From positions 124,001 through 188,000 of the IMG/VR virus record IMGVR_UViG_3300020178_000002: a DNA stretch of 64,000 nucleotides; one strand, 5' to 3'. The notes under the pieces were generated by a model. It was not told the origin of the DNA and did not search any database. It saw only the letters and a program-made list of their open reading frames with translations. The position numbers and the translations under genes are program-made. Below are positions 22,134 through 62,838 of the stretch, piece by piece. Numbering within the stretch: position 1 is the stretch's first letter; each line of letters begins with the position of its first letter.

Positions 22134-22169
22134 AGGCAGGTTCTCATATGAGGCTCTGCCTTTTTTTTT
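22134..22169 (+). terminator. Intrinsic terminator
   Basis: AGGCAG..CTCA-TA-TGAG..CTGCCT plus T run. Confidence 0.8.
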
Positions 22170-22212
22170 GTTTATAGTCTCCATGCATTATTAATGTGAA
22201 AGGCATGGAACT

Positions 22213-45100: not shown

Positions 45101-46998
45101 TAAATGATGCTACTGCTCAAGGTAATCTGACTTCAATTACAGATATCCTAACAGACATTTCTGGAGACTTGGCTGGAAGTGCTACTGCACATATTGAGGG
45201 TGCTGGTATTCGCATTGTAAATGCTAATGCAAACATCAGCTCTTACATTAAAGTTGGTGCAGGCACAGGGAACAGTGCATTTGGTGTCACAGAGGGAGAT
45301 TCTGTCTCTGCTGTGGGTGTAAGTGCTAAAGCTGTTGTTTCTTCTCTTATGAGTCATTCTGAAGCTAAAGCTAATTTCTCTACCTCTTTGTTCTCAACAG
45401 AGCCACAAGCAAATGCTGCTGTTGGTTATTATGCAGACAAAGCTGTTGCATATGTGTTCAAGAATCAAGTTGGCAGAGAGTATGTTGGATTTGAGAGTCT
45501 TTCTACAGGAAATTCATCTATCCTTGAAGTCACTGGTGGAAGAATTGCAACAACTAAGGGCAATGGTCTTAAGCTTGTTGTAGGCTCTGGTGCAGTAGGT
45601 GAGGAAGCATATCAAGGATTTGTTGTTACTTCAGACAATGCACAAGGTTCTGGTTCTGCAAACACCTCTCGACTAAATGATGCTGTTGGTGCAGATGGTA
45701 TCATTGGTCAAACATATATAGATGAAGTGACAGGCTTAACCTTTACTTTACTTGAGAGAGAAGGTGGTATTGATTATCCTACAGGTGCAGATGCACAGAT
45801 TAGTTTCAAGGTAGGTACTGTCTTCACATCTAATGCGAATATCCCGACTCCAGCTATTCCAGGTGTTTCATTGATTGTATCTAACACTTTAGATACTTCT
45901 ATTGGTGATACTGCATTGGTTGAAGTTTTTAATAAAGAAGGTAATGAGCCAAACTTAGGTCAGGTTTATTATGTTGACTTTACTAGAATTCGTACTGAGT
46001 TTAATACTCGTACCTTCTCTAGTCTTGCAGATGTCATTTCAACCTATGGTGAGATCAGCCCAAATAACTCTTTGAGTCTTGGTGCTTTGTTAGCTTTCTC
46101 AAATGGTGCAACTGCAATAGCCTGTAAGCAAGTTCAACTTGAAGCAGGAGAGTCAAGCTTAAGTGAAGATCAAGTGGTTCAAGCAATCCAAGACCTTGAG
46201 GGTGAGATTGTTCCAGGATTGACACCATCTGTTATTGTTCCTTTGTACCCAGCCACTACAGCGATTGTTTCTGCAATCTCTAACCACTGTGACATTCAGT
46301 CCTCTTTGCGTTATCGTTCAGAGCGTAGAGCTGTTTTGGGTGTAAGAGCTGGAACACAACCTAGAGAAGTACAGTCTCTAGCACAATCTGCAAACAACAC
46401 AAGAATCTGTATTGTCTATCCAGACCTTGCAAACGTTTCTTATGTAGATGGAAATGGTATCACTCAAACAATTCTTGTCGGTGGTGAGTATGTTGCTGTT
46501 GCAACAGCTTTAGCAACAAGCAATCCTTCTATTGATAGTGCTACTCCTTGGACAGGTCGTTCTATTGCAGGTATTTCTTCACTTGCTCGTCTACTTGACG
46601 AGGTAGATGCAAATGCAACTGCAAATGCAGGTGTTACAGTTCTTTCTCAAAGAGCTGATGGCATTAAGGTAAGACATGGCTTAACTACAAACATGACTTC
46701 TGTTCTTACAAAGACTCCTACTGTTATCCAGATTGCAGATGACGTTCAGATTCGCTCTAGGAACTTACTTTCACGCTATGTAGGGGTTAAGTTCGTACCT
46801 CAAGTGATTCAGCAAATAGAGGGTAGATTAAACGCTTTCTTTAAGCAACTTGTAAGAGATCAAATCATTTCAACTTACACAGGTCTTTCAGTGTCGAGAG
46901 ATGCAACTGACCCAACTCAGTTGAATGTTGAAGTTTTCTACAAGCCTGTTTACCCACTTCTATATATCCAATTTACTTTCACAGTACAGGGTAGCTAA
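42187..46998 (+). CDS. Contractile tail sheath protein (1603 aa, large insertions)
   Basis: N-terminal YLPPGVYT; C-terminal sheath domain (HCDIQSSLRYRSERRAV, VRHGLTT, YVGVKF, VEVFYKPVYPLLYIQFTFTV). Confidence 0.9.
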   Translation: MAIEGSSYLPPGVYTNTIFETQNQNQALVQGRVPTLIGTGRETVISTGNILVRGSSSTVDQRIVEEDPTGRMVSGVDGNGNYIYTDYSEGANQLQVRHFPIVSGDGSGSTTNVPSSVTVSINGTNTVIISLDGANGLITLAEAPKEGDDVRVSYFFNRTDTLVEGENLSSQVSPQDTELLGSNSNFVIDASSNTLILTVDGETGVITLPNGAAGDRANSLQRVIATLNGAGLATLEADSYTDAEGNDNLILTAKGSILVGNGTANFSVGVYNNQTGTARNRTFYTQYGPIVDGSNGGVVTTDTSLVTIRVNGVEVTPASVDGANGSITLALAPVVDSSIEVDYYHNTFQDQFDYIPGRDITSIDRVSLVASGGGGPSLFVQDVDFVLSEDRIVWGSASVVSAGSIQEGEVAFGSNQISSSLRDEKAYLVECSSVSTTTIPPRVLSNTFKLPFQPVDGSGLGKPTRRTDLVEVRTGVSLADALERSPATVVKVDPVNSQVVLSSAVPTNHKVFASFYYSNIQDSFGTSAYVVEVESVGASGIGTYSLSSPTRTFYSVDLESKGVDLQEVTLTFPSGSEARSGARIADGTPVSENVTVEIRNYDETPAFFFSEGFGDYFLIQGSSDTLAMEIDLQATTVDFSAPMGAGRNGNITTVVGGVLPYDAASNNTNYGATALTRAMTLTVDGITFAEASINGVGDDVEDWVSAINTVADAEAPVYTSMSAFGAWEAKANTYASFKFRYVGDSNGSSVATATIQAAVYLSQTDLANAVSTAITNAIANDIVNANADFTGLSLTCGVDSLSRLTFSLDSLPNLNDTYGFIEFISDTDTSFLTIAGIDYDTENNTTNGNGTQTKFGYLPVAAFSRTTLTSGELRDRLILKGRTVVGNSYYPVSDLGVSIDQGTRVEDAGFEVGTVVPSVRTSVVDAPSILLRLGWSEVDGDGIPAKTLYSTGNDQNNTLSLEIDGQTINITLNDATAQGNLTSITDILTDISGDLAGSATAHIEGAGIRIVNANANISSYIKVGAGTGNSAFGVTEGDSVSAVGVSAKAVVSSLMSHSEAKANFSTSLFSTEPQANAAVGYYADKAVAYVFKNQVGREYVGFESLSTGNSSILEVTGGRIATTKGNGLKLVVGSGAVGEEAYQGFVVTSDNAQGSGSANTSRLNDAVGADGIIGQTYIDEVTGLTFTLLEREGGIDYPTGADAQISFKVGTVFTSNANIPTPAIPGVSLIVSNTLDTSIGDTALVEVFNKEGNEPNLGQVYYVDFTRIRTEFNTRTFSSLADVISTYGEISPNNSLSLGALLAFSNGATAIACKQVQLEAGESSLSEDQVVQAIQDLEGEIVPGLTPSVIVPLYPATTAIVSAISNHCDIQSSLRYRSERRAVLGVRAGTQPREVQSLAQSANNTRICIVYPDLANVSYVDGNGITQTILVGGEYVAVATALATSNPSIDSATPWTGRSIAGISSLARLLDEVDANATANAGVTVLSQRADGIKVRHGLTTNMTSVLTKTPTVIQIADDVQIRSRNLLSRYVGVKFVPQVIQQIEGRLNAFFKQLVRDQIISTYTGLSVSRDATDPTQLNVEVFYKPVYPLLYIQFTFTVQGS

Positions 46999-49986: not shown

Positions 49987-52743
49987 ATGTTTGATCATAT
50001 ACTAAAAGAGCTAAGAGTCTCTAAAACTTTGCTGGATAAAACATCTGAAGCTCTTAGAAAGAGAGCTGAAGATAAAGAAATTCTTCAAAAAGCTAGAGAG
50101 TCCTTAAAGGATAAAAAATATAAAGACCCCGAGAACAATAAGGAGATCTCTTTTAGTACTGCATACAATAGGAAAGTACCTCAAGCCCAACAAGACCTCC
50201 AGAAAGCCCTCTCCAAAGTCAGGTCTGAAGGTCAAGAAGAAGGTTCAGTGGATACTAGTGGCCTAAATGAAGAACAAGTAGATCTTCTTGAAAGAATAGC
50301 GAAAGGTAAAAAGACCAGCGATATGTCTCTGGTTGAGCAGAGAACCTTAAGAGAGTCTTTGGCCTTACTTTTTGATGCTCAGGACACATTGAAAAAAGAT
50401 GGAGTTGAAGAACCTTTAAAGACAGCAGAGCCTAAGAAGAAAAAACAGTATGCTAAAAAGGTAAAAAAGAAAGTAGTCGAGAAGGGTGAGAAAGTTGTCA
50501 AAAGTCTTAAAAAAGAGAAAGATTTACCAGAAGACACTACCATAGAAGATATTGTAGATGTAGACACCCTAGCTGAAACACATTCTGAAGATGCAAATGC
50601 CATAGATACTACTTTAAAGAAGCAAGAGAGCAGCAGGAAAGATAAGCTTAAGAAGAGGTTTCAAGAGCAAGAACAGAAAGCAGACAAAGATAAAGGTGCA
50701 ATCTTAAAGAGTCTGGAGAAATCCATAGACTCTTTTTCTCAGAAAGCTATTGAAGACCTTGAGGATAAGATAAAAGATGTTAAAGAGTCTTTGCAAAACA
50801 AATCCCATTCTAAAGACAAGCTTGATGATCTTGAAGAACAGCTTGAAGATCTTGAGTACCAGAAAGACATAAGAGAGCTAAATGCAAAAAATACCCAAGC
50901 GAAGTATCAAAAATCATTAAAAGATGCATTGGAAAACATACCTGATTTTGATGATGAACAAACAAAGAAGCTTTCCGAGTCCTATGCTAAAATGGGTGGT
51001 GATCTAGTAAGGAAACTAGAGGATATAGAAGATCTCAAGAGCTTTGTAGATGATAACCTATCAGAGTTAGAAAACTTAGATGAGTCTAGTGAGGAGTATG
51101 CAGAAAATGTAGGTAAACTAATGGCTCTTAAAACAATGAAAGAGGAAGTTATTAGTGACCCTACATTTGGCTTTTCTCCACCAGCTAAGAATTCAAGTCC
51201 AGAATTCTTAGAGGAATACAAAGAGTTTTTAGGGGAAGAACAAAGAAAGAAGTTCAATTCTTTCACCCCCGAAGAAAGAAATTCTGCTAGTTCAAAGCTT
51301 GCGTATGAAAAAGAAGACTTAATGGACATAATAGATGACGCAAGTACTTCACCAGAAAAAAGAGAGGAAGCCCAAAGGAGACTTTTCTTAGTTAAAGAAA
51401 CCGAATCAGCTCTCAACACCTCTCGAATACTGAATGGAGAAGACCCTATAGATGGTTATTACTATGTGGATGAGAATCTTTTAAATATAGCTAAGACTGA
51501 TGATGGTGAATATAATGAAAGTCTAGTCAAAGCTATCTCTGTTATTTCAAAGACAGATGTTTCAAATGAAGAGATGAGAAGCATTGTAGATACTGCTCTA
51601 AAAGATATGCCATTAGAACAGTGGGAGTCCATAGTTGGAGATTCTGAAATATACAATAGTATGAAAGGTCCTTTAGATCCTCTTTACTGTCCCATACACC
51701 CAGACAATATAGCAAAGGGTGTTAGTGGAGAAACAGTAAACAGAAAAGAAGATTGTCCTAGACCTGTTAGTGAGGACATGATCAACACTATCAAAGACAC
51801 TATCAACAAATCCTATTTAGATATACAGACCTCATTTAAAGCTCAATCTAAGAAGAAGTCTCTAACAACTCGTAAGAACAAAAACCTATCTAAGTTTCTA
51901 CATGAAAACCAAGATGATTTTATGGAGAAGCTAGTAAGTGGGGTAGGAAAAGATGGCAATCCAATAACAGACGAAGAAAAGGAAGACTTCATGAATTTCT
52001 TCTTCATGAAGATAAGAGGACTCAGTGTTTTGAATCTTGACCTGCAAGGTGAAAAGATCACAGGTGTTCGAGACATTATGAAGCAACTAAATCGTGTTCG
52101 AAAATTGGATGGGGCAGAGAAGATAAGAGCAACAGAAGAGCTTAAGAAGGTTTTTCTTGATTTAATGGAGAAAGATCCTATCGAAAAGCAGTCTTCTTTT
52201 AATAATCTATTTATTGACTATACTAATACCTATGGAGGTGTATTCATGCACAAAAAATCAACAACATACCAAGACTACCAGAAAAGAAGTAAAGACTTCA
52301 AAGTAGGTATGAAAGTATATTACTTTTGGGAGGGCAACAGTAGCCAACCTGGAGTAGTTGTTGCTGTCTACCCTTCTATTGGTATGGTAGATGTCGAATA
52401 CCCTCATGGCAGTCAAAGAATCCCTGTCGAAGAACTTATCGTTGATGCTTCAGGAGATGTCAAGGCATTGCCTGAGTCAACGATTCCAGGTGGCAGGGGG
52501 GTTGTTCCTGTAAGTGCGAGAGTAGCAAATAACTACTTGAAAAAAGCTATTTATTGGAGAAATATAAATAGAAGATACAAGCTATGTAAAGGTGAAGACC
52601 CCAACAAGCCAAACTGCCCAAAGTGTAAAACCCAAATGGGTAAAACAGTTTATAAGAGAAGAGACTCACAGAGCGAAAGACTATTTGCCTGCCCTAGTTG
52701 TCTCTTTGTTATCAAGTCCTCTGATATTGAAGGAGCAAACTAA
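49987..52743 (+). CDS. Large charged coiled-coil head-region protein with C-terminal SH3-like and zinc-ribbon domains
   Basis: Start moved to ATG 49987; K/E/D-rich; C-terminal FKVGMKV...PGVVVAV and CPKC...CPSC; probable in-frame internal start at 52246. Confidence 0.7.
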   Translation: MFDHILKELRVSKTLLDKTSEALRKRAEDKEILQKARESLKDKKYKDPENNKEISFSTAYNRKVPQAQQDLQKALSKVRSEGQEEGSVDTSGLNEEQVDLLERIAKGKKTSDMSLVEQRTLRESLALLFDAQDTLKKDGVEEPLKTAEPKKKKQYAKKVKKKVVEKGEKVVKSLKKEKDLPEDTTIEDIVDVDTLAETHSEDANAIDTTLKKQESSRKDKLKKRFQEQEQKADKDKGAILKSLEKSIDSFSQKAIEDLEDKIKDVKESLQNKSHSKDKLDDLEEQLEDLEYQKDIRELNAKNTQAKYQKSLKDALENIPDFDDEQTKKLSESYAKMGGDLVRKLEDIEDLKSFVDDNLSELENLDESSEEYAENVGKLMALKTMKEEVISDPTFGFSPPAKNSSPEFLEEYKEFLGEEQRKKFNSFTPEERNSASSKLAYEKEDLMDIIDDASTSPEKREEAQRRLFLVKETESALNTSRILNGEDPIDGYYYVDENLLNIAKTDDGEYNESLVKAISVISKTDVSNEEMRSIVDTALKDMPLEQWESIVGDSEIYNSMKGPLDPLYCPIHPDNIAKGVSGETVNRKEDCPRPVSEDMINTIKDTINKSYLDIQTSFKAQSKKKSLTTRKNKNLSKFLHENQDDFMEKLVSGVGKDGNPITDEEKEDFMNFFFMKIRGLSVLNLDLQGEKITGVRDIMKQLNRVRKLDGAEKIRATEELKKVFLDLMEKDPIEKQSSFNNLFIDYTNTYGGVFMHKKSTTYQDYQKRSKDFKVGMKVYYFWEGNSSQPGVVVAVYPSIGMVDVEYPHGSQRIPVEELIVDASGDVKALPESTIPGGRGVVPVSARVANNYLKKAIYWRNINRRYKLCKGEDPNKPNCPKCKTQMGKTVYKRRDSQSERLFACPSCLFVIKSSDIEGAN

Positions 52744-52744
52744 G

Positions 52745-54133
52745 ATGGCATTTTTAAGGTACGCAAAAGCTAATGTAGTTCGCCCTCAAGTACACGGGCT
52801 AGATTGGGACAAAGTAAGAGTTGCTTCTGGTAATAGGCAACTAAACCAATCTTTAAAGAAAAAAGCTGAAGATATTCTAGGGGAGGCATTTACCCCAGAT
52901 AGATTTCTTTTAACACATGCTACTATCGTATGTTCTGTAGATTCTGTAACGCCTCCAAATACAAAAACAGGATCTATTAAAGAAGGTGGCTTTACTATAA
53001 ACAGAAAGTATTCTGATTACAGAATCTCAAAGGAGACTGACAAGTATATTAATAATAACCTAGACTCATGGTCTAGAGGTGTTATTAAAAGATCTTATCA
53101 GACTTTCATAGGTTCTCATAACTTTGTAGAGCATGTTCAAGTAGAAGAGCTTTCTAAGGGCAAAATCATTGATGCTGTTTTAAGAGACATTGGTGAAAGC
53201 CTCTATGTAGATATTCTAGTAGCTACTGATAGGAAACACAAAGACCTTGTAGAGCAGATTCTCTCTGGCCAGATGAACTCTATGTCTATGGGTTGTTCAG
53301 TCGATTTTACTATTTGTACTAAATGTGGTCACGTTGCAGCAGACGAAACTGAAATGTGTTCACATGTGAAGTATGAAAAAGGAAATACATTCTTTGATGA
53401 CCAAGGCAATAAGCACAGAGTTGCTGAGTTATGTGGTCACGAAGATGTGGGTGAGACTGCTGGTGTTACTTTTATTGAGGCTTCTTGGGTTGCAACTCCT
53501 GCTTTTCCAGGTGCGGTTGCTAGAAATACCATTGAAATACCCTCTTCTGATAACCCCTCAGAAGTTCCTTCAAAATGGGTAGATAAATCTGCAAGCCTTT
53601 CTTTAACTTCTGCTTTTGGAATGGAAGAAGAAGAAGAATCTGAAGAAGGTGGAGATAAAGAACCAGCAGACGAGTCTCTCCTTAAGAAGCTAGATTCAGT
53701 ATATGAGCAAGCTATCATAGACAGATTCAAGAATAAGCTTGAAACTGAGATGAAGAAAGAGAAAGCTCAAGAGAAACTCTATCCTCCCACAAGTCAATCT
53801 TCTGTAGCCCAGAACGACACTGTGATTAAAGAAGGAAAGAAAGTCTCAACCAGAGAGTATACTAAAGCATTAGATATTTCTGTAAAGACAGCTTCTAATT
53901 TAGAAGAAGCACTCTTTAACATTGCTTTAGTAAACAATCACTTTGGTGTCAGCATCCCTTCTCACCTTTATAAGATAGCCAGTAAGCTAGGAAGCACTTC
54001 TAAATATGCATCTGTTCAAGATTATATTGAGAAAGCTGTAAGCCTACATGGTAAAGCATTATCGGAGAAAGATTCTTTCATCTTAATTCGGTTAGCAAAA
54101 ATAACATCCCTTAACAACTTCGGGCAGAAATAA
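52745..54133 (+). CDS. Prohead maturation protease (HK97/herpes assemblin-like) with Zn-binding insertion
   Basis: Start moved to ATG 52745 (AAGGAG SD); NFVEH, GKIIDA, SMSMGC, CTKCGH...CSH, FIEASWVATPAFPGA; upstream of scaffold and capsid genes. Confidence 0.8.
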   Translation: MAFLRYAKANVVRPQVHGLDWDKVRVASGNRQLNQSLKKKAEDILGEAFTPDRFLLTHATIVCSVDSVTPPNTKTGSIKEGGFTINRKYSDYRISKETDKYINNNLDSWSRGVIKRSYQTFIGSHNFVEHVQVEELSKGKIIDAVLRDIGESLYVDILVATDRKHKDLVEQILSGQMNSMSMGCSVDFTICTKCGHVAADETEMCSHVKYEKGNTFFDDQGNKHRVAELCGHEDVGETAGVTFIEASWVATPAFPGAVARNTIEIPSSDNPSEVPSKWVDKSASLSLTSAFGMEEEEESEEGGDKEPADESLLKKLDSVYEQAIIDRFKNKLETEMKKEKAQEKLYPPTSQSSVAQNDTVIKEGKKVSTREYTKALDISVKTASNLEEALFNIALVNNHFGVSIPSHLYKIASKLGSTSKYASVQDYIEKAVSLHGKALSEKDSFILIRLAKITSLNNFGQK

Positions 54134-54169
54134 AGTCTTGCCCTCTACGATATGAAAGGACTATGCCTT

Positions 54170-55819
54170 ATGTCTAGGTATTCCCGTTCTAAGTCTCGCA
54201 TGACTTCAGCTCGAAAAAGTCGTGTTCGCAAAGCAACCTCATCAGTTCCAGGTTATGATAATCTAGGTTGGGATCACTTCGGTCACCCTGCTTCAGCAGA
54301 ACAACCAGATCTTGAAGAATATGGTATTGATTCTGATTTCGGTGAAGGTGTTCGCAAAGGTCCTTATGAGGACAGCCCTGCACCTGCTTCTTACTCATGG
54401 GAGCCTGATCACCCTGCACACTCAAAGAAAGCTCTAAAGAGTGCTATGGAGCGTAAAGCTGCTAAGTGCATTCGTATTGCTGAGTCTCGTCTTGGTAAGT
54501 TTGCTTCTCAACGTGAGATCGAAGATCTTGCACTTCGCTTCATGGATCTTCCTAACAGTGTAATCAACTCAAGAGTTGCTAGCATTGAAGACCCAATGGC
54601 TGAAGAAATTGATGCTATGCATGATATGTATGCAGAAGACATTGATCCAATGGCTGAAGAAGTCGAAGGTATGATGTACGCAGAAGACCCTATGGCTGAA
54701 GAGGTTGAAGGCATGATGTATGCTGAAGACCCTATGGCTGACCTTATGTATGACGACATGGATGACGACATGGGTATGATGGCAGACCTTATGGATGACT
54801 CTATGGATGATTCTATGGATATGATGGCAGACCTTATGGATGACTCTATGGATGATTCTATGGATATGATGGCAGACCTTATGGATGATTCTATTGATGA
54901 CGACATGGATATGATGGCTGACCTTATGGATGATGACATGGGTGATTCTATTGATGACGACATGGGTATGATGGCTGAAAGTCTTTTCGCTATGGAGCAT
55001 GACGCTATGGAGCATGACGCTATGGAGCATGGCATGTTTGCAAGCATTGATGAGCCTGTAGCAGACGACATGGGCGACATCATGGCAGACTTGTTTGGAG
55101 AAGAAACTGAGAGTGAAGCTGATATCCTAGCTGACGAAGTTGCTAGTCTTAAAGCTGCAAATGCCAGACTAGCTCGCAAAGTAAGAAATCTTAGCAGAAC
55201 TGTAAACGCTTCTAAAGCAGAGGAAGTAAAAGCAGAAGAGACTGAGGCAGAAGAAACTGAAAGCACCGAAGAGAAAGTAGCTCGTATCGAGAGACTTGCA
55301 AACGCTTTAGCTGACTACATGGCTGAGATGGAGCGTACTGCTGCTGAAGAGGAAGAAGCTAAAGAGGAAGAAGCTCCTAAAGAAGAAGCTAAAGAAGAAG
55401 CTCCTAAAGAGGAAGCTAAAGAAGAAGCTCCTGCTGAGAAGAAAGCTTATAACTCAATGGCAGATATTCTTGCAGAGCTTGAAGTAGAGAGTGAAGAAGT
55501 TGATCCTATGGCAGAAGAGCTTGAGCCTGTAGCTGAAGACCCAATGGGACTAGACAGTGTGGCTGACATGCAAATTGATGCTCGTCTTGCTTCTATCTTC
55601 ACTGCTGGTGAAGAAGGTGAAGTTGCAGAAGAAACTGAAGCAGAAGAAACTGAAGCAGAAGAAACTGATGCTGGTAAGAAAGCTTCATATCGCCCAAGCA
55701 CTCAAGCTCGTCAAGCATCTGTAAAGACTCTTGGAAACATCAGTCGTGAAGCTTCAAGCTCTGATGAACTCAGCAAGCTTTGGGAATCTGCTCCAGACGT
55801 AAGCAAATTCTTCGGTTAA
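54170..55819 (+). CDS. Capsid scaffold-like acidic protein with Met/Asp repeats
   Basis: Start moved to ATG 54170; highly acidic, low complexity, coiled coil; between protease and capsid genes. Confidence 0.75.
   Translation: MSRYSRSKSRMTSARKSRVRKATSSVPGYDNLGWDHFGHPASAEQPDLEEYGIDSDFGEGVRKGPYEDSPAPASYSWEPDHPAHSKKALKSAMERKAAKCIRIAESRLGKFASQREIEDLALRFMDLPNSVINSRVASIEDPMAEEIDAMHDMYAEDIDPMAEEVEGMMYAEDPMAEEVEGMMYAEDPMADLMYDDMDDDMGMMADLMDDSMDDSMDMMADLMDDSMDDSMDMMADLMDDSIDDDMDMMADLMDDDMGDSIDDDMGMMAESLFAMEHDAMEHDAMEHGMFASIDEPVADDMGDIMADLFGEETESEADILADEVASLKAANARLARKVRNLSRTVNASKAEEVKAEETEAEETESTEEKVARIERLANALADYMAEMERTAAEEEEAKEEEAPKEEAKEEAPKEEAKEEAPAEKKAYNSMADILAELEVESEEVDPMAEELEPVAEDPMGLDSVADMQIDARLASIFTAGEEGEVAEETEAEETEAEETDAGKKASYRPSTQARQASVKTLGNISREASSSDELSKLWESAPDVSKFFG
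54590..55030 (+). repeat. Coding tandem repeats (EDPMAEEVEGMMYA; 45-bp MADLMDDSMDDSMDM; 15-bp AMEHD)
   Basis: Exact 45-bp units at 54779-54823 and 54824-54868, plus degenerate copies. Confidence 0.9.
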
Positions 55820-56563: not shown

Positions 56564-57442
56564 ATGAGTAATACAGTTGATAATTCAGTAAAACAAAAGA
56601 TCATTAGCGACTACATCAAGACCCCTCAAGGTCGTGCAAAGCTAGCTGCTTCAATGACTCAACCTCTTCGTCTTCGCCGTGACTATACAAGCGTTGGTCG
56701 TAAGACCTTCCTTGTTGAGCAACTTCCTGATGGTGCGTTGCCTATTTACGACAAAGACCCAGACGTAACAGCTTTCGTAGTTGGTGAAGAAGGCGAGAAC
56801 ATTCTTGCTATCACCAAGCCTCGTCGTGTTATCTTCCCTCTCTTTGAGATTGCTTCTAACCCTGAGATTCCTTTAACTCAGATCAAGGAAAGACGCTTCG
56901 ATCTTATCGAGAGAGCACAGGATCTTGCTAGAGCACAAATTCAGGCTGCTGAAGACGAGCGTGTATTCGCTATTCTTGACGCAGTTGCAGCTAATGGTTT
57001 CGACAGCGTTTCTGGTCAAACCAATGCTGACATTCCTGTTATCGCTCCTCTTAATGGTGCTGTTCTTGCTGACGCATACAGCCTAATTGAGAGACATGAC
57101 CTTAGAGTTGCCCGTGTATTTATGAATGCTAGAGACTATGCTGACATTCGTAAGTTCGGTCGTGACATTCTCGATATCGAGAGTCAAGCAGCCCTTCTCA
57201 AGACAGGTCTACAAGCAACTCTTTGGGGTGCTCAAATCATCACAAGTCGTCTTGTTCCTGTTGGTACAGTTTATGTTTGTTGTGAGCCAGAAATGTTCGG
57301 TCGTATCCCTGTTCGTACAGAGTTGACTGTTCTTTCTGCTGACGATCCAAAAGCTCGTACAATCGGCTTCTCTTGCTTCGAGAATCTAGGTATCGGTGCT
57401 TATAACCCTCGTGGTCTTGCTAGACTTACTGTTACTCGCTAA
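56564..57442 (+). CDS. Major capsid protein (HK97 fold)
   Basis: 292 aa; PLFEIASNPEI...RRFDLIERAQ...IQAAEDERVF, VFMNARDYADIRK, LWGAQIITSRLVPVG; strongly biased codons; terminator follows. Confidence 0.88.
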   Translation: MSNTVDNSVKQKIISDYIKTPQGRAKLAASMTQPLRLRRDYTSVGRKTFLVEQLPDGALPIYDKDPDVTAFVVGEEGENILAITKPRRVIFPLFEIASNPEIPLTQIKERRFDLIERAQDLARAQIQAAEDERVFAILDAVAANGFDSVSGQTNADIPVIAPLNGAVLADAYSLIERHDLRVARVFMNARDYADIRKFGRDILDIESQAALLKTGLQATLWGAQIITSRLVPVGTVYVCCEPEMFGRIPVRTELTVLSADDPKARTIGFSCFENLGIGAYNPRGLARLTVTR

Positions 57443-57527: not shown

Positions 57528-57628
57528 ATTTATAGTCCTCCTTAGCTTTGATACTACTTAAAACTTGATCATTCCAAACCCTAGTATTTCGTTTATAGCT
57601 CCCATAGACAAAACAAGGAGTAAAAAAA

Positions 57629-59198: not shown

Positions 59199-59765
59199 AT
59201 GAAGAAATCTGCAAATGAAATTATTCAAAATCTTGAAACCAGAGTAGCCCAGCTTGAAAAGAAGTCTGCTCGAAAGTTCTCCCTATCCGCAGACTACCAT
59301 TATGTGTTTAAGCGTAGTTATTATGCTAAGTCTGTAGAGCGAGTAGACCATTCTAAGGTTCTCTTTGAGGGCCCTAAAAAGAAGTTTATTCCTCAAGGTT
59401 GGTCATATGGAGTTGATGAGATCAATTCTTTTGTTGAGAGAGATTTGATTCAGGAGATTGGTAAGATCCAAAAAGAGATCGAGGAAGTTTTTTATGCAAG
59501 TGGAGTTGACCCAACAGAGTTAAGGGAAGATTTCGAGGACTCTGGCAACAAGTTTGAGTGGGTGTTGGTTGCTCAAGGTCGTGCGTATGAGGGAGAGGTT
59601 TTGAAACTCGCCTATGTACGCATTAAAGATAAGACCTACAACTTCTATGTAGCACCCTCAATCGAAATTAAGGTTCTCAACACAAAAGGCAGGGCTGTTA
59701 AGGCAAACTACATCCTTAATACCCTAGCATCCGAGCTAGGTATGAGAACTGTCCGTATCGGTTAA
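59199..59765 (+). CDS. Leader-tagged hypothetical protein
   Basis: MKKSANEIIQNLETRVAQLEKKSA; AAGGAG SD. Confidence 0.8.
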   Translation: MKKSANEIIQNLETRVAQLEKKSARKFSLSADYHYVFKRSYYAKSVERVDHSKVLFEGPKKKFIPQGWSYGVDEINSFVERDLIQEIGKIQKEIEEVFYASGVDPTELREDFEDSGNKFEWVLVAQGRAYEGEVLKLAYVRIKDKTYNFYVAPSIEIKVLNTKGRAVKANYILNTLASELGMRTVRIG

Positions 59766-59808: not shown

Positions 59809-59847
59809 AAGCCCTGCTACCCTTATTGGGTGGTGGGGGTTTTTTTT
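59809..59847 (+). terminator. Intrinsic terminator (direct-repeat copy 1)
   Basis: AAGCCCTGCTACCC-TTATT-GGGTGGTGGGGGTTT plus T run. Confidence 0.85.
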
Positions 59848-59902
59848 GTTTGTTTATAGTCCTAGGTGTCGTGTACCCTCACCAATACCATAAGGATTAG
59901 CT

Positions 59903-60802
59903 ATGAGAAGAATAGCATCAGAAATACTCAGAGAATTAGAGATAAGAGTAGCCCATTTAGAGGGTATGAGCCAAGATGACATGAGAAAGTCTATTGAGGT
60001 TGTGATAGAAAAAACTCCATCAAAGGTAAGAATAGATTATGTTGAGTTCCCTAAAACCCAAGAAGAGTTTTTAGAGATAGAAGCAAAGAACTTACCTGTT
60101 GTTTTTTATAATTGCCCTCTTGGAACAGAGATGGCAAGCCGATTAGATTTATTTAAGTCAGGCTTTAATCCTGTTGTGCAAGCAAGGCTTGCAGACAGAA
60201 AAAGCAAAGATATTGGTGAGGAAGTAGATATTAATCTCAAAGACCTTTTAAGGTCAAATTTTAACAATGGTACTCGATATGTAGGAAAACAACGTCTTAT
60301 GAAAGTAGGTTTGAAAAAACTGTTGGGTGTCAATCTTTATGAGAGAGGTCAGATTCTAGATGGGATGGAGGTGAGTTCTGCAAATATGTGGTGTGGGCCT
60401 AAAGGTTGTATTACACCATTACACCTCGACACAATTAACAACTTAGCATGGAACATATACGGACAAAAAACATGGTTTTTAGTGAGCCCAGAAGATATGT
60501 ACCACAATGCTTACTTAGAGCCATTCAAAGAGCCTTATGAAGAAGACTACAAAGGTGATTGGGATAGGAATGATAATAAAAGATCCCCTACTTTTTCAAA
60601 GATGACAGGGAATCCTTTAAAAAGCTTCGATAAGTTCCCGAAAGCTAGGGATATAAAATACCACAAGGTTGTTTTTCGGGAAAATGAGATACTGTATCTT
60701 CCTGCCTATTGGGGGCATTATGTTAAGACCGACTCTGACTCTTTGATGATTAACCACTGGTATGATGAAGTGCCAATTATTCTTAGATCTGAAAGAAAAT
60801 AA
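59903..60802 (+). CDS. Leader-tagged JmjC/cupin Fe(II)-2-oxoglutarate oxygenase
   Basis: NMWCG...TPLHLD (HxD), GQKTW, ILYLPAYWGHYV (distal H), INHW; leader MRRIASEILRELEIRVAHLEG. Confidence 0.88.
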   Translation: MRRIASEILRELEIRVAHLEGMSQDDMRKSIEVVIEKTPSKVRIDYVEFPKTQEEFLEIEAKNLPVVFYNCPLGTEMASRLDLFKSGFNPVVQARLADRKSKDIGEEVDINLKDLLRSNFNNGTRYVGKQRLMKVGLKKLLGVNLYERGQILDGMEVSSANMWCGPKGCITPLHLDTINNLAWNIYGQKTWFLVSPEDMYHNAYLEPFKEPYEEDYKGDWDRNDNKRSPTFSKMTGNPLKSFDKFPKARDIKYHKVVFRENEILYLPAYWGHYVKTDSDSLMINHWYDEVPIILRSERK

Positions 60803-60810
60803 ATTAGAAG

Positions 60811-60850
60811 AAGCCCTGCTACCCTTATTGGGTGGTAGGGGTTTTTTTTT
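60811..60850 (+). terminator. Intrinsic terminator (direct-repeat copy 2)
   Basis: AAGCCCTGCTACCC-TTATT-GGGTGGTAGGGGTTT plus T run; one mismatch to copy 1. Confidence 0.85.
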
Positions 60851-60899
60851 GTTTATTAACTTGTGTTATAAGTAAAGAGAATAACACAAGGGGATAATC

Positions 60900-62267
60900 A
60901 TGGAAGCTCCAGAAATAGACAAAAGAACTTTAAACTTCAAAGACAGGTCTTTGTCAGAGTTTCAAAAGTTAATCAAGTCTCTAAAAAAGTACTCTGATCA
61001 GATTAAATCAGAAATAGATGAGGACACCAAGAGACTTAGAGAACTGAAGATTCTTTTAGAGAGCCTTCCTCAAGTTAGAAACTATATTAGAAAGTTTGTA
61101 GGTCCTCTTAGAGAAGATACGTTTAAGTCAAAGAGGAATAAGACCCTGAAGCTATTAGCTGAGAACCTGTTAGGTCTGAAAACTTTAGAAGAGGTCTTGG
61201 CTGAAAAGGAAAAGATTGCTCTCAAGTCTAGGAGAGACATTCAACTTTATAAAGGTCAGAAAGAATACTTGAAGATCATACCTAAAGAGATAAGGGTATT
61301 CTTGCCAGATACTATCACAATAGATGTAGATTCAGAGGGTAGGGTAAAGAGAATAGGTGAGTTGTTTGCGAACAAGACTTATACGCTCACAGAAAAGCTC
61401 TCTAATCAACGAAAACTCTTAGAGAGGTATAGTGACATAAGTTCCTCACTAAAAAGCGGTCTAAGCTCAAATAAAGAGCAGGAGAGGATTTCATCACTTA
61501 TTAGCTTAATAATATTAGAGACAGGTATTCGACCAGGTAGAAAAGGAAACAGAATCTTAAAAGATGAAGATGAGATTCAGACATTTGGTGCAACTACTCT
61601 AAGAAGAAGCCATGTTAAGTTTTTGAGTGATGGTACAGCCCAGCTTACTTTTAAAGGTAAGAAAGGTGCAACAAACAAAGCCATTGTTAGAGACTCTGAT
61701 GTGGTTTCAGAGTTAAAAAGAATCTCAAAGAGTTGTAAGGGGGAAGACTGTCTCTTTAAGTATGAAGATGGTTCAGATTACACTTACTCCCACCTCAAAG
61801 ATTTCTTTAACAAAAACTTTGAGGGTCTAAAGATCACAGACTTTAGAAAGTTAAGAGCAACAGAAGAAGTATTTAACTTACTCAAAGAAGAAAGAAACAA
61901 CTTACTTTCAAAAATAAAATCCTATTCTGACTTAGAAGCAGCAGAGGCAGAGAAGAAGACTGTAGCTGAAATCTGTAAGGTTTTAACTAAAGCCCATGAG
62001 CAGGCACAGATAGCCCTGTCACATGATTCTTCTAGGACTACAAAACAATCTTACATAAACCCAGAAGTCATTCTTCACTTCTTAAGCACGGCAAACTTGA
62101 AAGGGTCTTTAAAAGACACTATTCTAAAAGGAAAGACGAAACTACACTTTGATCCTCAAATGTTTTTAAGGCAGTCTCAAAGAGTAGCTTCGTCTTTTAA
62201 ATTTTCTGGTGAAGTATCAGGGTTCACCCTACATAACATGGTAGAATTGTTAGAACACATTATTTAA
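60900..62267 (+). CDS. DNA topoisomerase IB (poxvirus/bacterial type)
   Basis: Catalytic pentad visible in GIRPG, FKGKKG, DFRKLRAT, LSH and KQSYINP; FGATTL motif. Confidence 0.88.
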   Translation: MEAPEIDKRTLNFKDRSLSEFQKLIKSLKKYSDQIKSEIDEDTKRLRELKILLESLPQVRNYIRKFVGPLREDTFKSKRNKTLKLLAENLLGLKTLEEVLAEKEKIALKSRRDIQLYKGQKEYLKIIPKEIRVFLPDTITIDVDSEGRVKRIGELFANKTYTLTEKLSNQRKLLERYSDISSSLKSGLSSNKEQERISSLISLIILETGIRPGRKGNRILKDEDEIQTFGATTLRRSHVKFLSDGTAQLTFKGKKGATNKAIVRDSDVVSELKRISKSCKGEDCLFKYEDGSDYTYSHLKDFFNKNFEGLKITDFRKLRATEEVFNLLKEERNNLLSKIKSYSDLEAAEAEKKTVAEICKVLTKAHEQAQIALSHDSSRTTKQSYINPEVILHFLSTANLKGSLKDTILKGKTKLHFDPQMFLRQSQRVASSFKFSGEVSGFTLHNMVELLEHII

Positions 62268-62277
62268 GGGGTTTTTT

Positions 62278-62838
62278 ATGAGTAATGACTTTGGTGGGGG
62301 TAATGAAAGATCTCTCTATATTCCAATGAGTGAAATAGAGATGGAGTTTATCCATAGACTTGTAGAGGCAAAAGAAATCTATGTAGAGATACATGGCTGG
62401 GGTCACATCAACCAACCAACTATTACCTTTGGAGATAAGAATCTTCATGTTGGTTTTAAGATGTTCTTTGACAGACCAAACTTTCCAATGCCTGTTTACT
62501 TCTTTGATATGGAACTTAAGACTAGATCAAACATTACTCTTTTTAGGGAGAAGATGTCTGCCATGTATGGGGGAGAGCCTTTGAGTGTAATGGAGGGCTT
62601 AGAGCTTGATATGGTCTGGGATATATCTATCAAATACATAGACCCTAAACTAATAAAAGCCTTGATGCCAAACACTTTAGGTTTAACAACAAGGCTTCAA
62701 GATACTGCCACTCATGATATTACAGTGACAGGTAATATGTCTCTGAATCGAGACTTAAAAGAAAAGGCTTACCATTTAGATCAAATGGAAAAACTAATAA
62801 AGGCCGATAACATGCGAAAGATAAAGACTAACTCTTAA
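62278..62838 (+). CDS. Hypothetical protein
   Basis: 186-aa ORF co-oriented with topoisomerase IB. Confidence 0.7.
   Translation: MSNDFGGGNERSLYIPMSEIEMEFIHRLVEAKEIYVEIHGWGHINQPTITFGDKNLHVGFKMFFDRPNFPMPVYFFDMELKTRSNITLFREKMSAMYGGEPLSVMEGLELDMVWDISIKYIDPKLIKALMPNTLGLTTRLQDTATHDITVTGNMSLNRDLKEKAYHLDQMEKLIKADNMRKIKTNS

What the first reader, a model, noticed from the sequence alone, without database searches (positions are those of the whole stretch)
60852..62267. Topoisomerase IB with late-gene signals and a cleavable-looking tail
Seen: full catalytic pentad, an upstream TTTAT plus SD-adjacent hairpin, and a C-terminal RVAS followed by a ~24-aa tail ending LHNMVELLEHII, similar to cargo tails (LTQILEGR, TRRLEHY, TLVLEDIHY). 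Established: type IB topoisomerases are uncommon in phages, and poxviruses package theirs in the virion core. Inference: a virion-packaged topoisomerase loaded through a C-terminal version of the tag.
Basis: partly seen in the sequence, partly recalled or inferred. Interest (0 to 1): 0.6.

Follow-up and report, generated by a model that had tools for sequence, protein, structure and literature searches.

The report
Phage topoisomerase IB with docking tail
A 312-kb marine or salt-marsh jumbo phage encodes a genuine type IB topoisomerase whose conserved, flexible C-terminal tail looks like a detachable docking peptide, possibly for loading the enzyme into the capsid, though packaging is not shown.

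Summary
Window 60900-62267 (+) encodes a 455-aa type IB topoisomerase. It matches Pfam Topoisom_I at E 3.6e-17. The pentad R211/K254/R316/H375/Y385 is invariant in 43 relatives. The AF2 core is confident, and its best structural matches are bacterial, human and poxvirus TopIB.

The RVAS motif and 24-aa tail are real. The tail is not lineage-specific. Most relatives have [KR]xA[SG], a variable linker and a short amphipathic helix at the C-terminus. A 41%-identical in-genome paralogue ends exactly at the Ala of that motif. In the model the tail is a disordered linker plus a low-confidence helix, so it looks like a tethered docking peptide.

[KR]xAS is about 2.3-fold over-represented in three related genomes. 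It is concentrated in the prohead protease, an acidic scaffold-like protein and the N-tagged proteins, so I infer it is the maturation-protease site. This fits a herpesvirus M-site-like loading-and-release tail.

Against this, unbiased profile and alignment tests find no significant similarity between the topoisomerase tail and the "cargo tails". Replication proteins of the same phage also carry acidic-hydrophobic tails. TTTAT is generic and the hairpin is lineage-specific.

Packaging is plausible (about 0.4) but unproven. Replisome docking is nearly as likely. A conserved 186-aa gene always follows the tailed copy.

The parts
60814..60849 (+). Intrinsic terminator of the upstream N-tagged JmjC/cupin gene: an 11-bp stem followed by a T-run. 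It is a 90% copy of the terminator at 59812-59848.
   Evidence: repeat D1
60850..60858 (+). Promoter-like TGTTTATTA, with TTTAT at 60852-56. It sits about 48 nt before the ATG, where TTTATA-type motifs lie upstream of many genes. It is the TTTATT variant, which is not the class linked to tagged genes.
60860..60890 (+). 5'-leader hairpin with a 10-bp perfect stem (60860-69 and 60881-90) and an 11-nt loop. Its 3' arm overlaps the SD. The last 52 nt of the leader are 100% identical in the orthologue L065 (87% identical in protein). The hairpin is absent in more distant orthologues.
   Evidence: (I10)
60888..60894 (+). Shine-Dalgarno AAGGGGA
60900..62267 (+). Type IB topoisomerase gene, 455 aa
60900..61289 (+). 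N-terminal all-helical domain (residues 1 to about 130). It is specific to this phage family and is not covered by Pfam or PDB matches.
61389..62192 (+). Catalytic core. Catalytic codons: R211 61530-32, K254 61659-61, R316 61845-47, H375 62022-24, Y385 62052-54.
62181..62192 (+). RVAS (residues 428-431), the junction motif [KR]xA[SG]. I infer it is a maturation-protease site (A|S). The tail-less paralogue ends at the aligned Ala.
62193..62228 (+). Variable, disordered linker (residues 432-443; pLDDT below 50 for 433-442)
62229..62264 (+). Tail helix (residues 444-455), amphipathic. L451 is kept in at least 90% of relatives. pLDDT is 55-59 and the helix is not packed on the core.
62278..62838 (+). 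p186, a conserved 186-aa protein with a beta-sandwich and a long C-terminal helix. Its SD overlaps the topoisomerase stop codon. It lies 10-218 nt downstream of the tailed topoisomerase gene in every locus that holds a p186 homologue. Function unknown.
59903..60802 (+). Context: JmjC/cupin protein with the N-terminal LExRVAxLE tag, immediately upstream
59199..59765 (+). Context: N-tagged 188-aa protein
52592..54133 (+). Context: prohead protease. It has 5 [KR]xAS motifs against 0.47 expected, at positions kept in G001 and G002. One lies just after the catalytic domain.
54152..55819 (+). Context: acidic repeat protein, scaffold-like. It has 6 [KR]xAS motifs against 0.53 expected. The last is 20 aa from a conserved C-terminal helix.
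56564..57442 (+). Context: major head protein
   Evidence: phrog_2522, E 8.5e-51

Best explanation
Shown:
- The gene encodes a catalytically intact type IB topoisomerase. It has a phage-specific helical N-domain and a TopIB core.
- The protein ends in a conserved three-part appendage: a [KR]xA[SG] junction (here RVAS), a variable disordered linker, and a short amphipathic helix with a near-invariant Leu.

Inferred mechanism (my commitment):
- The tail is a detachable docking peptide that recruits this copy of the enzyme into the assembling prohead.
- The helix binds the inner shell or the scaffold in the same way as the C-terminal end of the scaffold-like protein.
- The prohead protease then cuts at RVA|S and frees the enzyme inside the head. 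The freed C-terminus equals that of the tail-less paralogue.
- The enzyme would enter the host with the DNA and relax the incoming genome. The tail-less paralogue in the replication gene cluster would serve intracellular replication.
- This is the logic of the herpesvirus scaffold M-site (established knowledge): an A|S cut removes a roughly 25-aa capsid-binding tail.
For: Identity:
- PF01028 E 3.6e-17.
- PDB sequence hits to TopIB.
- Foldseek top hits 3m4a and 2f4q (D. radiodurans TopIB), human Topo I and variola topoisomerase.
- Pentad invariant.

Tail:
- It is present throughout the sister clade of the tail-less paralogues and in deeper branches.
- The junction motif is strict in 34/42 and nearly so in 6 more.
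- AF2 gives the linker pLDDT below 50 and the helix 55-59, not docked on the core.

Cleavage-site inference:
- [KR]xAS counts are 131 vs 57 expected (G000), 152 vs 60 (G001) and 118 vs 50 (G002).
- R/K, A and S are each specifically enriched at their own positions.
- The motif is concentrated in orthologous head-module proteins: protease 5 vs 0.47, with conserved positions flanking the catalytic domain; scaffold-like 6 vs 0.53; a 783-aa protein 9 vs 0.62; N-tagged proteins 20 vs 4.1.
- N-tags are followed at once by [KR]x[AS] in 23/26, 22/29 and 11/16 cases.
- The paralogue ends at the aligned Ala.
- The composite C-terminal format occurs in 9/334 proteins vs 0.14 in shuffles and 0/219 internal windows: six N-tagged proteins, the topoisomerase, a UvrD-like helicase and one unknown.

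Gene position:
- In G000 the order is head module, two N-tagged genes, topoisomerase, p186, all on one strand.
- In G001 the cassette lies about 3.5 kb from the head module.
- In L008, L014 and L019 it lies next to homologues of the two genes that follow the sheath gene.
- The tail-less paralogue lies near PolA and the DnaB-like helicase.
Against: - There is no virion, proteomic or timing data.
- Neither a profile HMM of the tails nor Smith-Waterman ranking links the topoisomerase tail to any other C-terminus.
- I wrote the composite pattern after seeing the sequences.
- K and A of the junction are also present in the tail-less paralogue, so they may be structural residues of the last core helix. 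One [KR]xAS in 455 aa is not unusual by itself.
- G001 keeps the topoisomerase tail although its N-tagged proteins lack such tails.
- Most related genomes have only the tailed copy, which must then also work inside the cell.
- Other replication proteins of the phage carry acidic-hydrophobic C-terminal tips: the DnaB-like helicase, an SNF2 ATPase and an SSB-like p251.
- The promoter variant is not the TTTATAG class linked to tagged genes.
- In G002 the gene is about 40 kb from the head module.
Confidence: 0.4

Rival explanations
1. Replisome or repair-hub docking. The tail is an acidic-hydrophobic C-terminal interaction peptide, like the SSB C-terminal tip, the T7 gp4 and gp2.5 tails, or a clamp-binding motif. 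It tethers the topoisomerase to a phage DNA-metabolism hub such as PolA, the beta-clamp-like protein or a partner of the SSB-like protein. It is never cleaved, and the enzyme works only inside the infected cell.
For: - Flexible linker plus a short helix is the typical architecture of such peptides.
- In most relatives the tail is strongly acidic with an L-E-x-h-F core at or near the C-terminus.
- The DnaB-like helicase, an SNF2 ATPase, the UvrD-like helicase and the SSB-like p251 end in similar tips in G000, G001 and G002.
- A tip pattern picks out the topoisomerase and p251 in both G000 and G001, among only 3-4 proteins per genome.
- The phage encodes a divergent beta-clamp-like protein and a PolA.
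- The cassette often lies next to an SNF2 helicase.
- G001 keeps the tail although its tagged proteins have no cargo tails.
Against: - The paralogue that sits among the replication genes is the one without the tail.
- The tip pattern was written after the fact, and Smith-Waterman ranking shows nothing above the null.
- The motif does not fit QL[SD]LF.
- p251 is not confirmed as an SSB.
- This model does not explain the conserved [KR]xA[SG] junction or the excess of [KR]xAS in the UvrD-like helicase.
Confidence: 0.33
2. The tail binds the product of the invariably adjacent gene, p186. Together they form a two-subunit topoisomerase or a regulated complex.
For: - p186 lies 10-218 nt downstream of a tailed copy in nine distinct lineages.
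- Tail-less copies lack this neighbour.
- p186 is more conserved than the topoisomerase.
- In the window its SD overlaps the topoisomerase stop codon.
Against: - Adjacency alone is weak evidence.
- Two tailed copies (L020 and the first copy in L025) lack an adjacent p186.
- p186 has no recognisable fold or family that would suggest a DNA role.
Confidence: 0.12
3. The tail is a degron, for the phage ClpP-like protease or for host proteases, or an auto-inhibitory element that folds back on the enzyme.
For: - The phage encodes a ClpP-like protein (judged by eye).
- C-terminal hydrophobic tails can act as degrons (general knowledge).
Against: - Between 0 and 9 residues follow the conserved helix, so no fixed C-terminal end is recognisable.
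- AF2 does not dock the tail on the core.
Confidence: 0.07

Closest known systems
Bacterial and poxvirus type IB topoisomerases (D. radiodurans TopIB, PDB 2f4q/3m4a; variola/vaccinia topoisomerase, PDB 2h7f)
   Same: They share the catalytic fold and the R-K-R-H-Y pentad.
   Different: Sequence identity is only 15-19%. This protein has an extra helical N-domain of about 130 aa in place of the small beta-sheet N-domain, and a C-terminal junction-linker-helix tail. Neither feature is described for those enzymes. No cleavable loading signal is known for the poxvirus enzyme.
Phage-specific topoisomerase I (tyrosine-recombinase-type catalytic domain) of jumbo phages Lu11, PaBG, phiRSL1, Motura and NCTB (PMC7824862)
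   Same: All are jumbo-phage TopIB-type enzymes. The prohead protease of this phage also finds Pseudomonas and Erwinia jumbo phages. phrog_23460 matches at E 7.8e-11.
   Different: tblastn of this protein against 50,697 phage records found nothing at E 1e-3, so it belongs to a different, metagenome-only lineage. No tail, paralogue pair or p186 cassette is described for the known ones.
Herpesvirus assemblin M-site and scaffold C-terminal tail (established knowledge)
   Same: In herpesviruses a maturation protease, of the fold family that includes phage prohead proteases, cuts at Ala|Ser about 25 aa from the C-terminus. This removes a short helix that binds the major capsid protein. Here RVA|S lies 25 aa from the end, and the scaffold-like protein has REA|S 21 aa from its end.
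   Different: The cleavage here is inferred from motif statistics only. The P3-like residue is K/R rather than V/L/I. The tail sits on an enzyme, not on a scaffold.
T4 capsid targeting sequence (internal proteins, cut by gp21) and phiKZ/SPN3US head-protein processing (PMC5694885, PMC7411985, PMC10052503)
   Same: In both, terminal peptides direct proteins into the prohead and are removed by the prohead protease, and many ejected proteins are packaged.
   Different: Those signals are N-terminal and cleavage follows Glu (LxE or S/A/G-x-E). Here the candidate is C-terminal with an A|S-type site. The topoisomerase lacks the N-terminal LExRIARLE tag of this phage.
Encapsulin cargo-loading peptides
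   Same: A short C-terminal peptide on a flexible linker binds the inside of an HK97-fold shell.
   Different: These peptides are not removed by proteolysis, have different sequence motifs and do not belong to a virus.
SSB C-terminal tip, T7 gp4/gp2.5 acidic tails, and clamp-binding peptides
   Same: They have an acidic-hydrophobic tip on a disordered linker at the extreme C-terminus of DNA-metabolism proteins.
   Different: The motif does not fit DDDIPF or QL[SD]LF. No partner was identified.

Membership tests
Type IB topoisomerase (Pfam PF01028 Topoisom_I) | Profile match above the curated cut-off | tested here: met
   62.9 bits against 23.7, residues 164-380. The genome scan gave 65.2 bits.
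Type IB topoisomerase (Pfam PF01028 Topoisom_I) | Catalytic Arg-Lys-Arg-His plus the nucleophilic Tyr | tested here: met
   R211, K254, R316, H375 and Y385 are invariant in 43 sequences. R, K, R and Y align to PDB 6z01.
Type IB topoisomerase (Pfam PF01028 Topoisom_I) | TopIB / tyrosine-recombinase catalytic fold | tested here: met
   The AF2 model has mean pLDDT 86.8. The Foldseek top 21 matches are all TopIB, E 4e-9 to 2e-6, and recombinases rank below them.
Type IB topoisomerase (Pfam PF01028 Topoisom_I) | ATP-independent relaxation through a 3'-phosphotyrosyl intermediate | not testable with these tools
   This needs an enzyme assay.
N-tagged protein set of this phage (N-terminal LExRIARLE-[KR]x[AS]) | The N-terminal tag within the first 45 residues | tested here: not met
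   The topoisomerase N-terminus has no tag. There are 26 tagged proteins in G000 and the topoisomerase is not among them.
Prohead-targeted, protease-trimmed internal head protein (T4 IP / phiKZ-type) | A terminal peptide shared with proven head-internal proteins | tested here: inconclusive
   The format is shared with six N-tagged proteins and resembles the C-terminal end of the scaffold-like protein. Profile and alignment tests are negative. None of the comparison proteins is a proven head protein.
Prohead-targeted, protease-trimmed internal head protein (T4 IP / phiKZ-type) | A cleavage site that matches the specificity of the prohead protease | tested here: inconclusive
   RVAS fits the over-represented [KR]xAS motif, which is concentrated in the head module. 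The specificity itself is inferred, not measured.
Prohead-targeted, protease-trimmed internal head protein (T4 IP / phiKZ-type) | Presence in virions and late expression | not testable with these tools
   Only metagenomic records exist. Metatranscriptome contigs touch the gene at low depth and give no timing. The promoter class is unresolved.
Beta-clamp client (clamp-binding motif) | A QL[SD]LF-type pentapeptide and a cognate clamp | tested here: inconclusive
   The family tail consensus L-E-x-h-F has different spacing. A divergent clamp-like protein exists (PF00712 E 0.0096; PDB DnaN E 0.006). Binding was not tested.

The most novel reading that the evidence does not exclude
This jumbo-phage lineage may use a herpesvirus-like 'M-site' logic for cargo. 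A C-terminal shell-binding helix, removed by an Ala|Ser-type cut, would load DNA enzymes into the capsid: the type IB topoisomerase and probably the UvrD-like helicase. This would work alongside more than 25 proteins that carry a conserved N-terminal LExRIARLE tag. The phage would then inject a poxvirus-like kit of DNA-handling enzymes with its genome.
Probability: 0.3. Interest if true: 0.8.

Novelty: new variant of a known kind. Interest (0 to 1): 0.55.

Why it matters
A virion-borne type IB topoisomerase has not, to my knowledge, been described for a phage. If the tail is a loading-and-release signal, this would be one, and it would parallel poxviruses.

It would also define a C-terminal, A|S-cleaved capsid-targeting peptide. 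That would extend the kinship between herpesvirus and tailed-phage assembly from fold to mechanism. Such a short peptide could be used to load foreign proteins into large capsids.

If the tail instead docks on the replisome, it marks a hub interaction in an uncultured clade of marine jumbo phages. In that case the conserved p186 partner gene is the next thing to explain.

Either way, the [KR]xAS motif and the N-tag system give concrete, testable predictions for the head proteome of a phage group known only from metagenomes.

Tried and rejected
- Complex prediction: the tail (residues 426-455) against p186 scored ipSAE 0.05 and 0.00. This is no verdict, neither for nor against binding.
- Profile HMM: a model built from 45 topoisomerase tails and searched against the proteomes of G000, G001 and G002 found only the topoisomerases. 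The next hits were an internal helix of a ClpP-like protein.
- Smith-Waterman ranking: the tail against all C-termini in three genomes gave nothing above the null from internal windows.
- Phage database searches: megablast and tblastn of the region and the protein against 50,697 phage records gave no match. tblastn of an N-tag also gave no match.
- p186: no Pfam or PHROG family. Foldseek PDB best E was 0.09, VIA Z was at most 4.3, and atlas TM was at most 0.39. The weak phage neck and adaptor hits were not used as evidence.
- Hairpin: there is no covariation, because it is identical in the only close orthologue and absent further out.
- TTTAT as a late-gene mark: rejected.
- Metatranscriptome contigs: they show fragments of all genes at low depth and give no starts or timing.
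- Clamp and SSB families: PF02768, PF02767, PF00705, PF02916, PF00436, PF10991 and PF08804 gave no hit in the genome. The SSB role of p251 therefore rests on its architecture and one atlas lead.
- N-tagged proteins: Pfam and PHROG scans of ten of them gave no family.
- Degron and auto-inhibition readings: set aside, for the reasons given under the rival explanations.
Full report
**What is there**

The window is bases 124001-188000 of a 312,136-bp virus record with direct terminal repeats. GC content is about 38%. The sequence is found nearly identically in salt-marsh, marine and seawater metagenomes from 17 studies.

The window carries a myovirus-type structural module:
- a sheath fusion protein at 42187-46998 (phrog_2839);
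- a prohead protease at 52592-54133 (phrog_18299; 42% identical to a 485-kb uncultured phage and 39% to Tunturiibacter phage Tunturi_5);
- an acidic repeat protein that I read as scaffold-like at 54152-55819;
- the major head protein at 56564-57442 (phrog_2522, E 8.5e-51).

The finding lies 3.5 kb downstream on the same strand. Two genes whose products start with a conserved N-terminal tag come before it.

**The enzyme**

ORF 60900-62267 encodes 455 aa. The evidence that it is a type IB topoisomerase:
- It matches Pfam Topoisom_I at E 3.6e-17, 62.9 bits against a cut-off of 23.7.
- It matches archaeal and Leishmania TopIB chains in the PDB by sequence.
- In an alignment of 43 relatives, R211, K254, R316, H375 and Y385 are invariant. 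I checked the codons in the DNA.
- An AF2 model built on that alignment has mean pLDDT 86.8.
- The best Foldseek matches are D. radiodurans TopIB, human Topo I and variola topoisomerase. Tyrosine recombinases rank well below.

Residues 1 to about 130 form a helical domain with no database match. The pentad claim is therefore correct, and the protein is very probably an active TopIB.

TopIB-type enzymes are already reported in some jumbo phages (PMC7824862). This lineage has no hit in 50,697 deposited phage genomes. It is known only from metagenomes: 45 cluster representatives, many on contigs of 177-375 kb.

**Two paralogues**

The genome holds a second TopIB at C1:84505-85851. It is 41% identical and ends ...EKLA, aligned to ...QRVA of the window copy. 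The 25 residues from S431 onward are therefore an extension.

The tail-less copy lies near PolA and a DnaB-like helicase. The tailed copy lies beside the head genes.

In a maximum-likelihood tree, the tail-less copies (this paralogue plus L016 and L017) form one supported clade. By inspection, the other 23 members of the surrounding group carry a tail, and so do several deeper branches. My automatic tail label was too strict, so I go by the printed tails.

The tail is thus old and family-wide.

**Anatomy of the tail**

Across the family the C-terminus reads, in order:
- FDPxxF..(K/R)x(A)(S/G);
- 8-17 variable residues;
- an amphipathic, usually acidic helix with a near-invariant Leu (L451 here) and often L-E-x-h-F;
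- 0-9 further residues.

The junction is strictly [KR]xA[SG] in 34 of 42 tailed sequences and close to it in six more. In the model the linker (433-442) has pLDDT below 50, and the helix (444-454) has 55-59 and does not pack on the core. This is the architecture of a tethered short docking motif.

**A candidate protease site**

After correcting each protein for its own composition, [KR]xAS occurs as follows:

| Genome | Observed | Expected |
|---|---|---|
| G000 (this genome) | 131 | 57 |
| G001 (375-kb relative) | 152 | 60 |
| G002 (297-kb relative) | 118 | 50 |

Position scans show that R/K, A and S are each specifically enriched at their own place in the motif.

The excess is concentrated in the same orthologous proteins in all three genomes:
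- the prohead protease (5 vs 0.47), with conserved positions before and just after the catalytic domain;
- the scaffold-like protein (6 vs 0.53), with the last site 20 aa from a conserved C-terminal helix;
- a 783-aa protein (9 vs 0.62);
- a UvrD-like helicase (6 vs 0.94; Pfam hits);
- the N-tagged proteins (20 vs 4.1).

The N-terminal tag..LExR(I/V)AxLE.., is carried by 26 proteins in G000, 29 in G001 and 16 in G002. It is followed at once by [KR]x[AS] in 23, 22 and 11 of them.

I infer that [KR]xA|S is the cleavage motif of the maturation protease. This is an inference from statistics and context. It is supported by analogy with herpesvirus assemblin, which cuts Ala|Ser and removes a capsid-binding scaffold tail of about 25 aa (established knowledge).

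On that reading, RVA|S in the topoisomerase is a release site. The trimmed enzyme would end where the paralogue ends.

**How strong is the link to the 'cargo tails'?**

They belong to N-tagged proteins that also end in [KR]xAS, a spacer, and h...LE near the C-terminus.

A composite pattern finds nine such proteins of 334, against 0.14 in shuffles and none in 219 internal windows. The nine are six N-tagged proteins, the topoisomerase, the UvrD-like helicase and one unknown. Two cautions apply: the six include tandem paralogues, and I wrote the pattern after seeing the sequences.

Unbiased tests fail. A profile of 45 topoisomerase tails finds no other protein. Smith-Waterman ranking of all C-termini gives nothing above the null. 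G001 keeps the topoisomerase and helicase tails, while its tagged proteins lack them.

The resemblance is therefore one of format, not demonstrable homology.

**The rival explanation**

The phage also encodes:
- a divergent beta-clamp-like protein;
- PolA;
- a DnaB-like helicase;
- an SNF2 ATPase;
- a 251-aa protein with SSB-like architecture (a folded body, a Gly/Ser linker and an acidic tip). One atlas lead points to gp32, and there is no Pfam support.

Several of these end in acidic-hydrophobic tips that resemble the tip of the topoisomerase tail. Docking to a replication or repair hub is thus a serious alternative.

Against it, the paralogue that sits in the replication cluster is the tail-less one, and this model leaves the junction motif unexplained.

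**A conserved cassette**

In every locus that holds a homologue of p186 (62278-62838), that gene follows a tailed copy of the topoisomerase gene at 10-218 nt. Tail-less copies never have this neighbour. Two tailed copies lack it.

p186 has 79 cluster representatives. It is a confidently modelled beta-sandwich with a long C-terminal helix (pLDDT 92). It has no informative match.

**Upstream signals**

- The intergenic region holds a strong terminator. It is a 90% copy of the one after the preceding gene.
- It then holds TGTTTATTA and a 10-bp hairpin that overlaps the SD.
- The last 52 nt are identical in an orthologue that is 87% identical in protein. More distant orthologues have no such hairpin.
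- TTTAT[AT] precedes about 30% of genes.
- The variant associated with tagged genes is TTTATAG (p 2e-4), and it also precedes three genes next to the head protein. The topoisomerase has TTTATT.
- RNA-library contigs touch the gene but give no timing.

'Late-gene signals' are therefore not established.

**Verdict**

- The enzyme is real but not unprecedented in jumbo phages.
- The tail is a conserved docking peptide with a plausible release site.
- Capsid loading is my preferred reading at about 0.4.
- Replisome docking stands at about 0.33, binding to p186 at about 0.12, and other readings share the rest.
- The larger discovery lies around the finding: an N-terminal tag on dozens of proteins, and a shared [KR]xA|S-type motif in the head module of an uncultured marine jumbo-phage clade.

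Noticed in passing
window 22213, 25987, 26784, 27847, 28951, 30632, 31740, 32684, 34523(-), 59199, 59903; genome-wide in G000, G001 (L031-L049), G002 (L050-L064): A highly conserved N-terminal tag (..LExR(I/V)AxLE-[KR]x[AS]; in G001 nearly invariant from the first Met) heads 26, 29 and 16 otherwise unrelated proteins in three related jumbo phages. One of them is a JmjC/cupin hydroxylase. Ten of the tagged proteins have no Pfam or PHROG family. tblastn finds no such tag in deposited phage genomes.
   Followed up: partly
window 52592-54133, 54152-55819; G000 C1:257191-259542, 201998-205123 and their orthologues in G001 and G002: The four-residue motif [KR]xAS is 2.3-2.5-fold over-represented. 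It piles up in the prohead protease, the acidic scaffold-like protein, a 783-aa unknown protein and a UvrD-like helicase, at conserved positions. It is probably the maturation-protease site (A|S type, as in herpesviruses).
   Followed up: partly
G000 C1:201998-205123 (L068:15998-19123): A UvrD-like helicase of 1041 aa carries six [KR]xAS motifs and a C-terminal 'site plus helix' tail like that of the topoisomerase. The G001 orthologue has the same format.
   Followed up: partly
G000 C1:84505-85851 (L002:973-2319): A second, tail-less TopIB paralogue with a very basic N-terminus lies in the replication gene cluster. Most related genomes have only the tailed copy.
   Followed up: yes
upstream regions genome-wide, e.g. 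window 22165-22180, 57585-57600, 59850-59860: There are promoter-like motifs 35-50 nt before start codons. One is a common TAATA-N5-7-TTTATA type. The other is a TTTATAG variant enriched before N-tagged genes (OR 9, p 2e-4) and present before three genes next to the head protein (window 49365, 55922, 57629).
   Followed up: partly
window 59812-59848 and 60814-60849: The same terminator (48-nt repeat, 90% identical) follows two consecutive genes, which suggests a duplicated terminator-promoter cassette.
   Followed up: yes
G000 C1:265506-266729 (L071:1273-2496); C1:93119-95719; C1:102155-103675; C1:73484-75088; C1:227271-228026; C1:97119-97850: The replication set comprises a divergent beta-clamp-like protein, PolA, a DnaB-like helicase, an SNF2 ATPase, an SSB-like protein with an acidic C-terminal tip (unconfirmed) and a ClpP-like protein. 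Several of them end in acidic-hydrophobic tails.
   Followed up: partly
window 54152-55819: An extremely acidic protein has tandem DPMAEE- and MADLMDD-type repeats between the protease and head-protein genes. Its last 30 or so residues are almost identical in all three genomes. I read it as a likely scaffold.
   Followed up: partly
window 185-9208 (-): A 3007-aa ORF has no Pfam or PHROG match.
   Followed up: no
L068:9104-9955 (-) = G000 C1:195104-195958, within a conserved block C1:193934-201081: A weak adenylate/guanylate-cyclase-like domain (PF00211, E 8e-6) lies in a block of about 15 genes that sits directly upstream of the topoisomerase cassette in several relatives. The block includes four proteins of 222-239 aa in tandem that may be paralogues.
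   Followed up: no
L018:8432-15205, L028:9836-12847, L030:623-4339: In other viral contigs the TopIB domain is fused into proteins of 1003-2257 aa.
   Followed up: no
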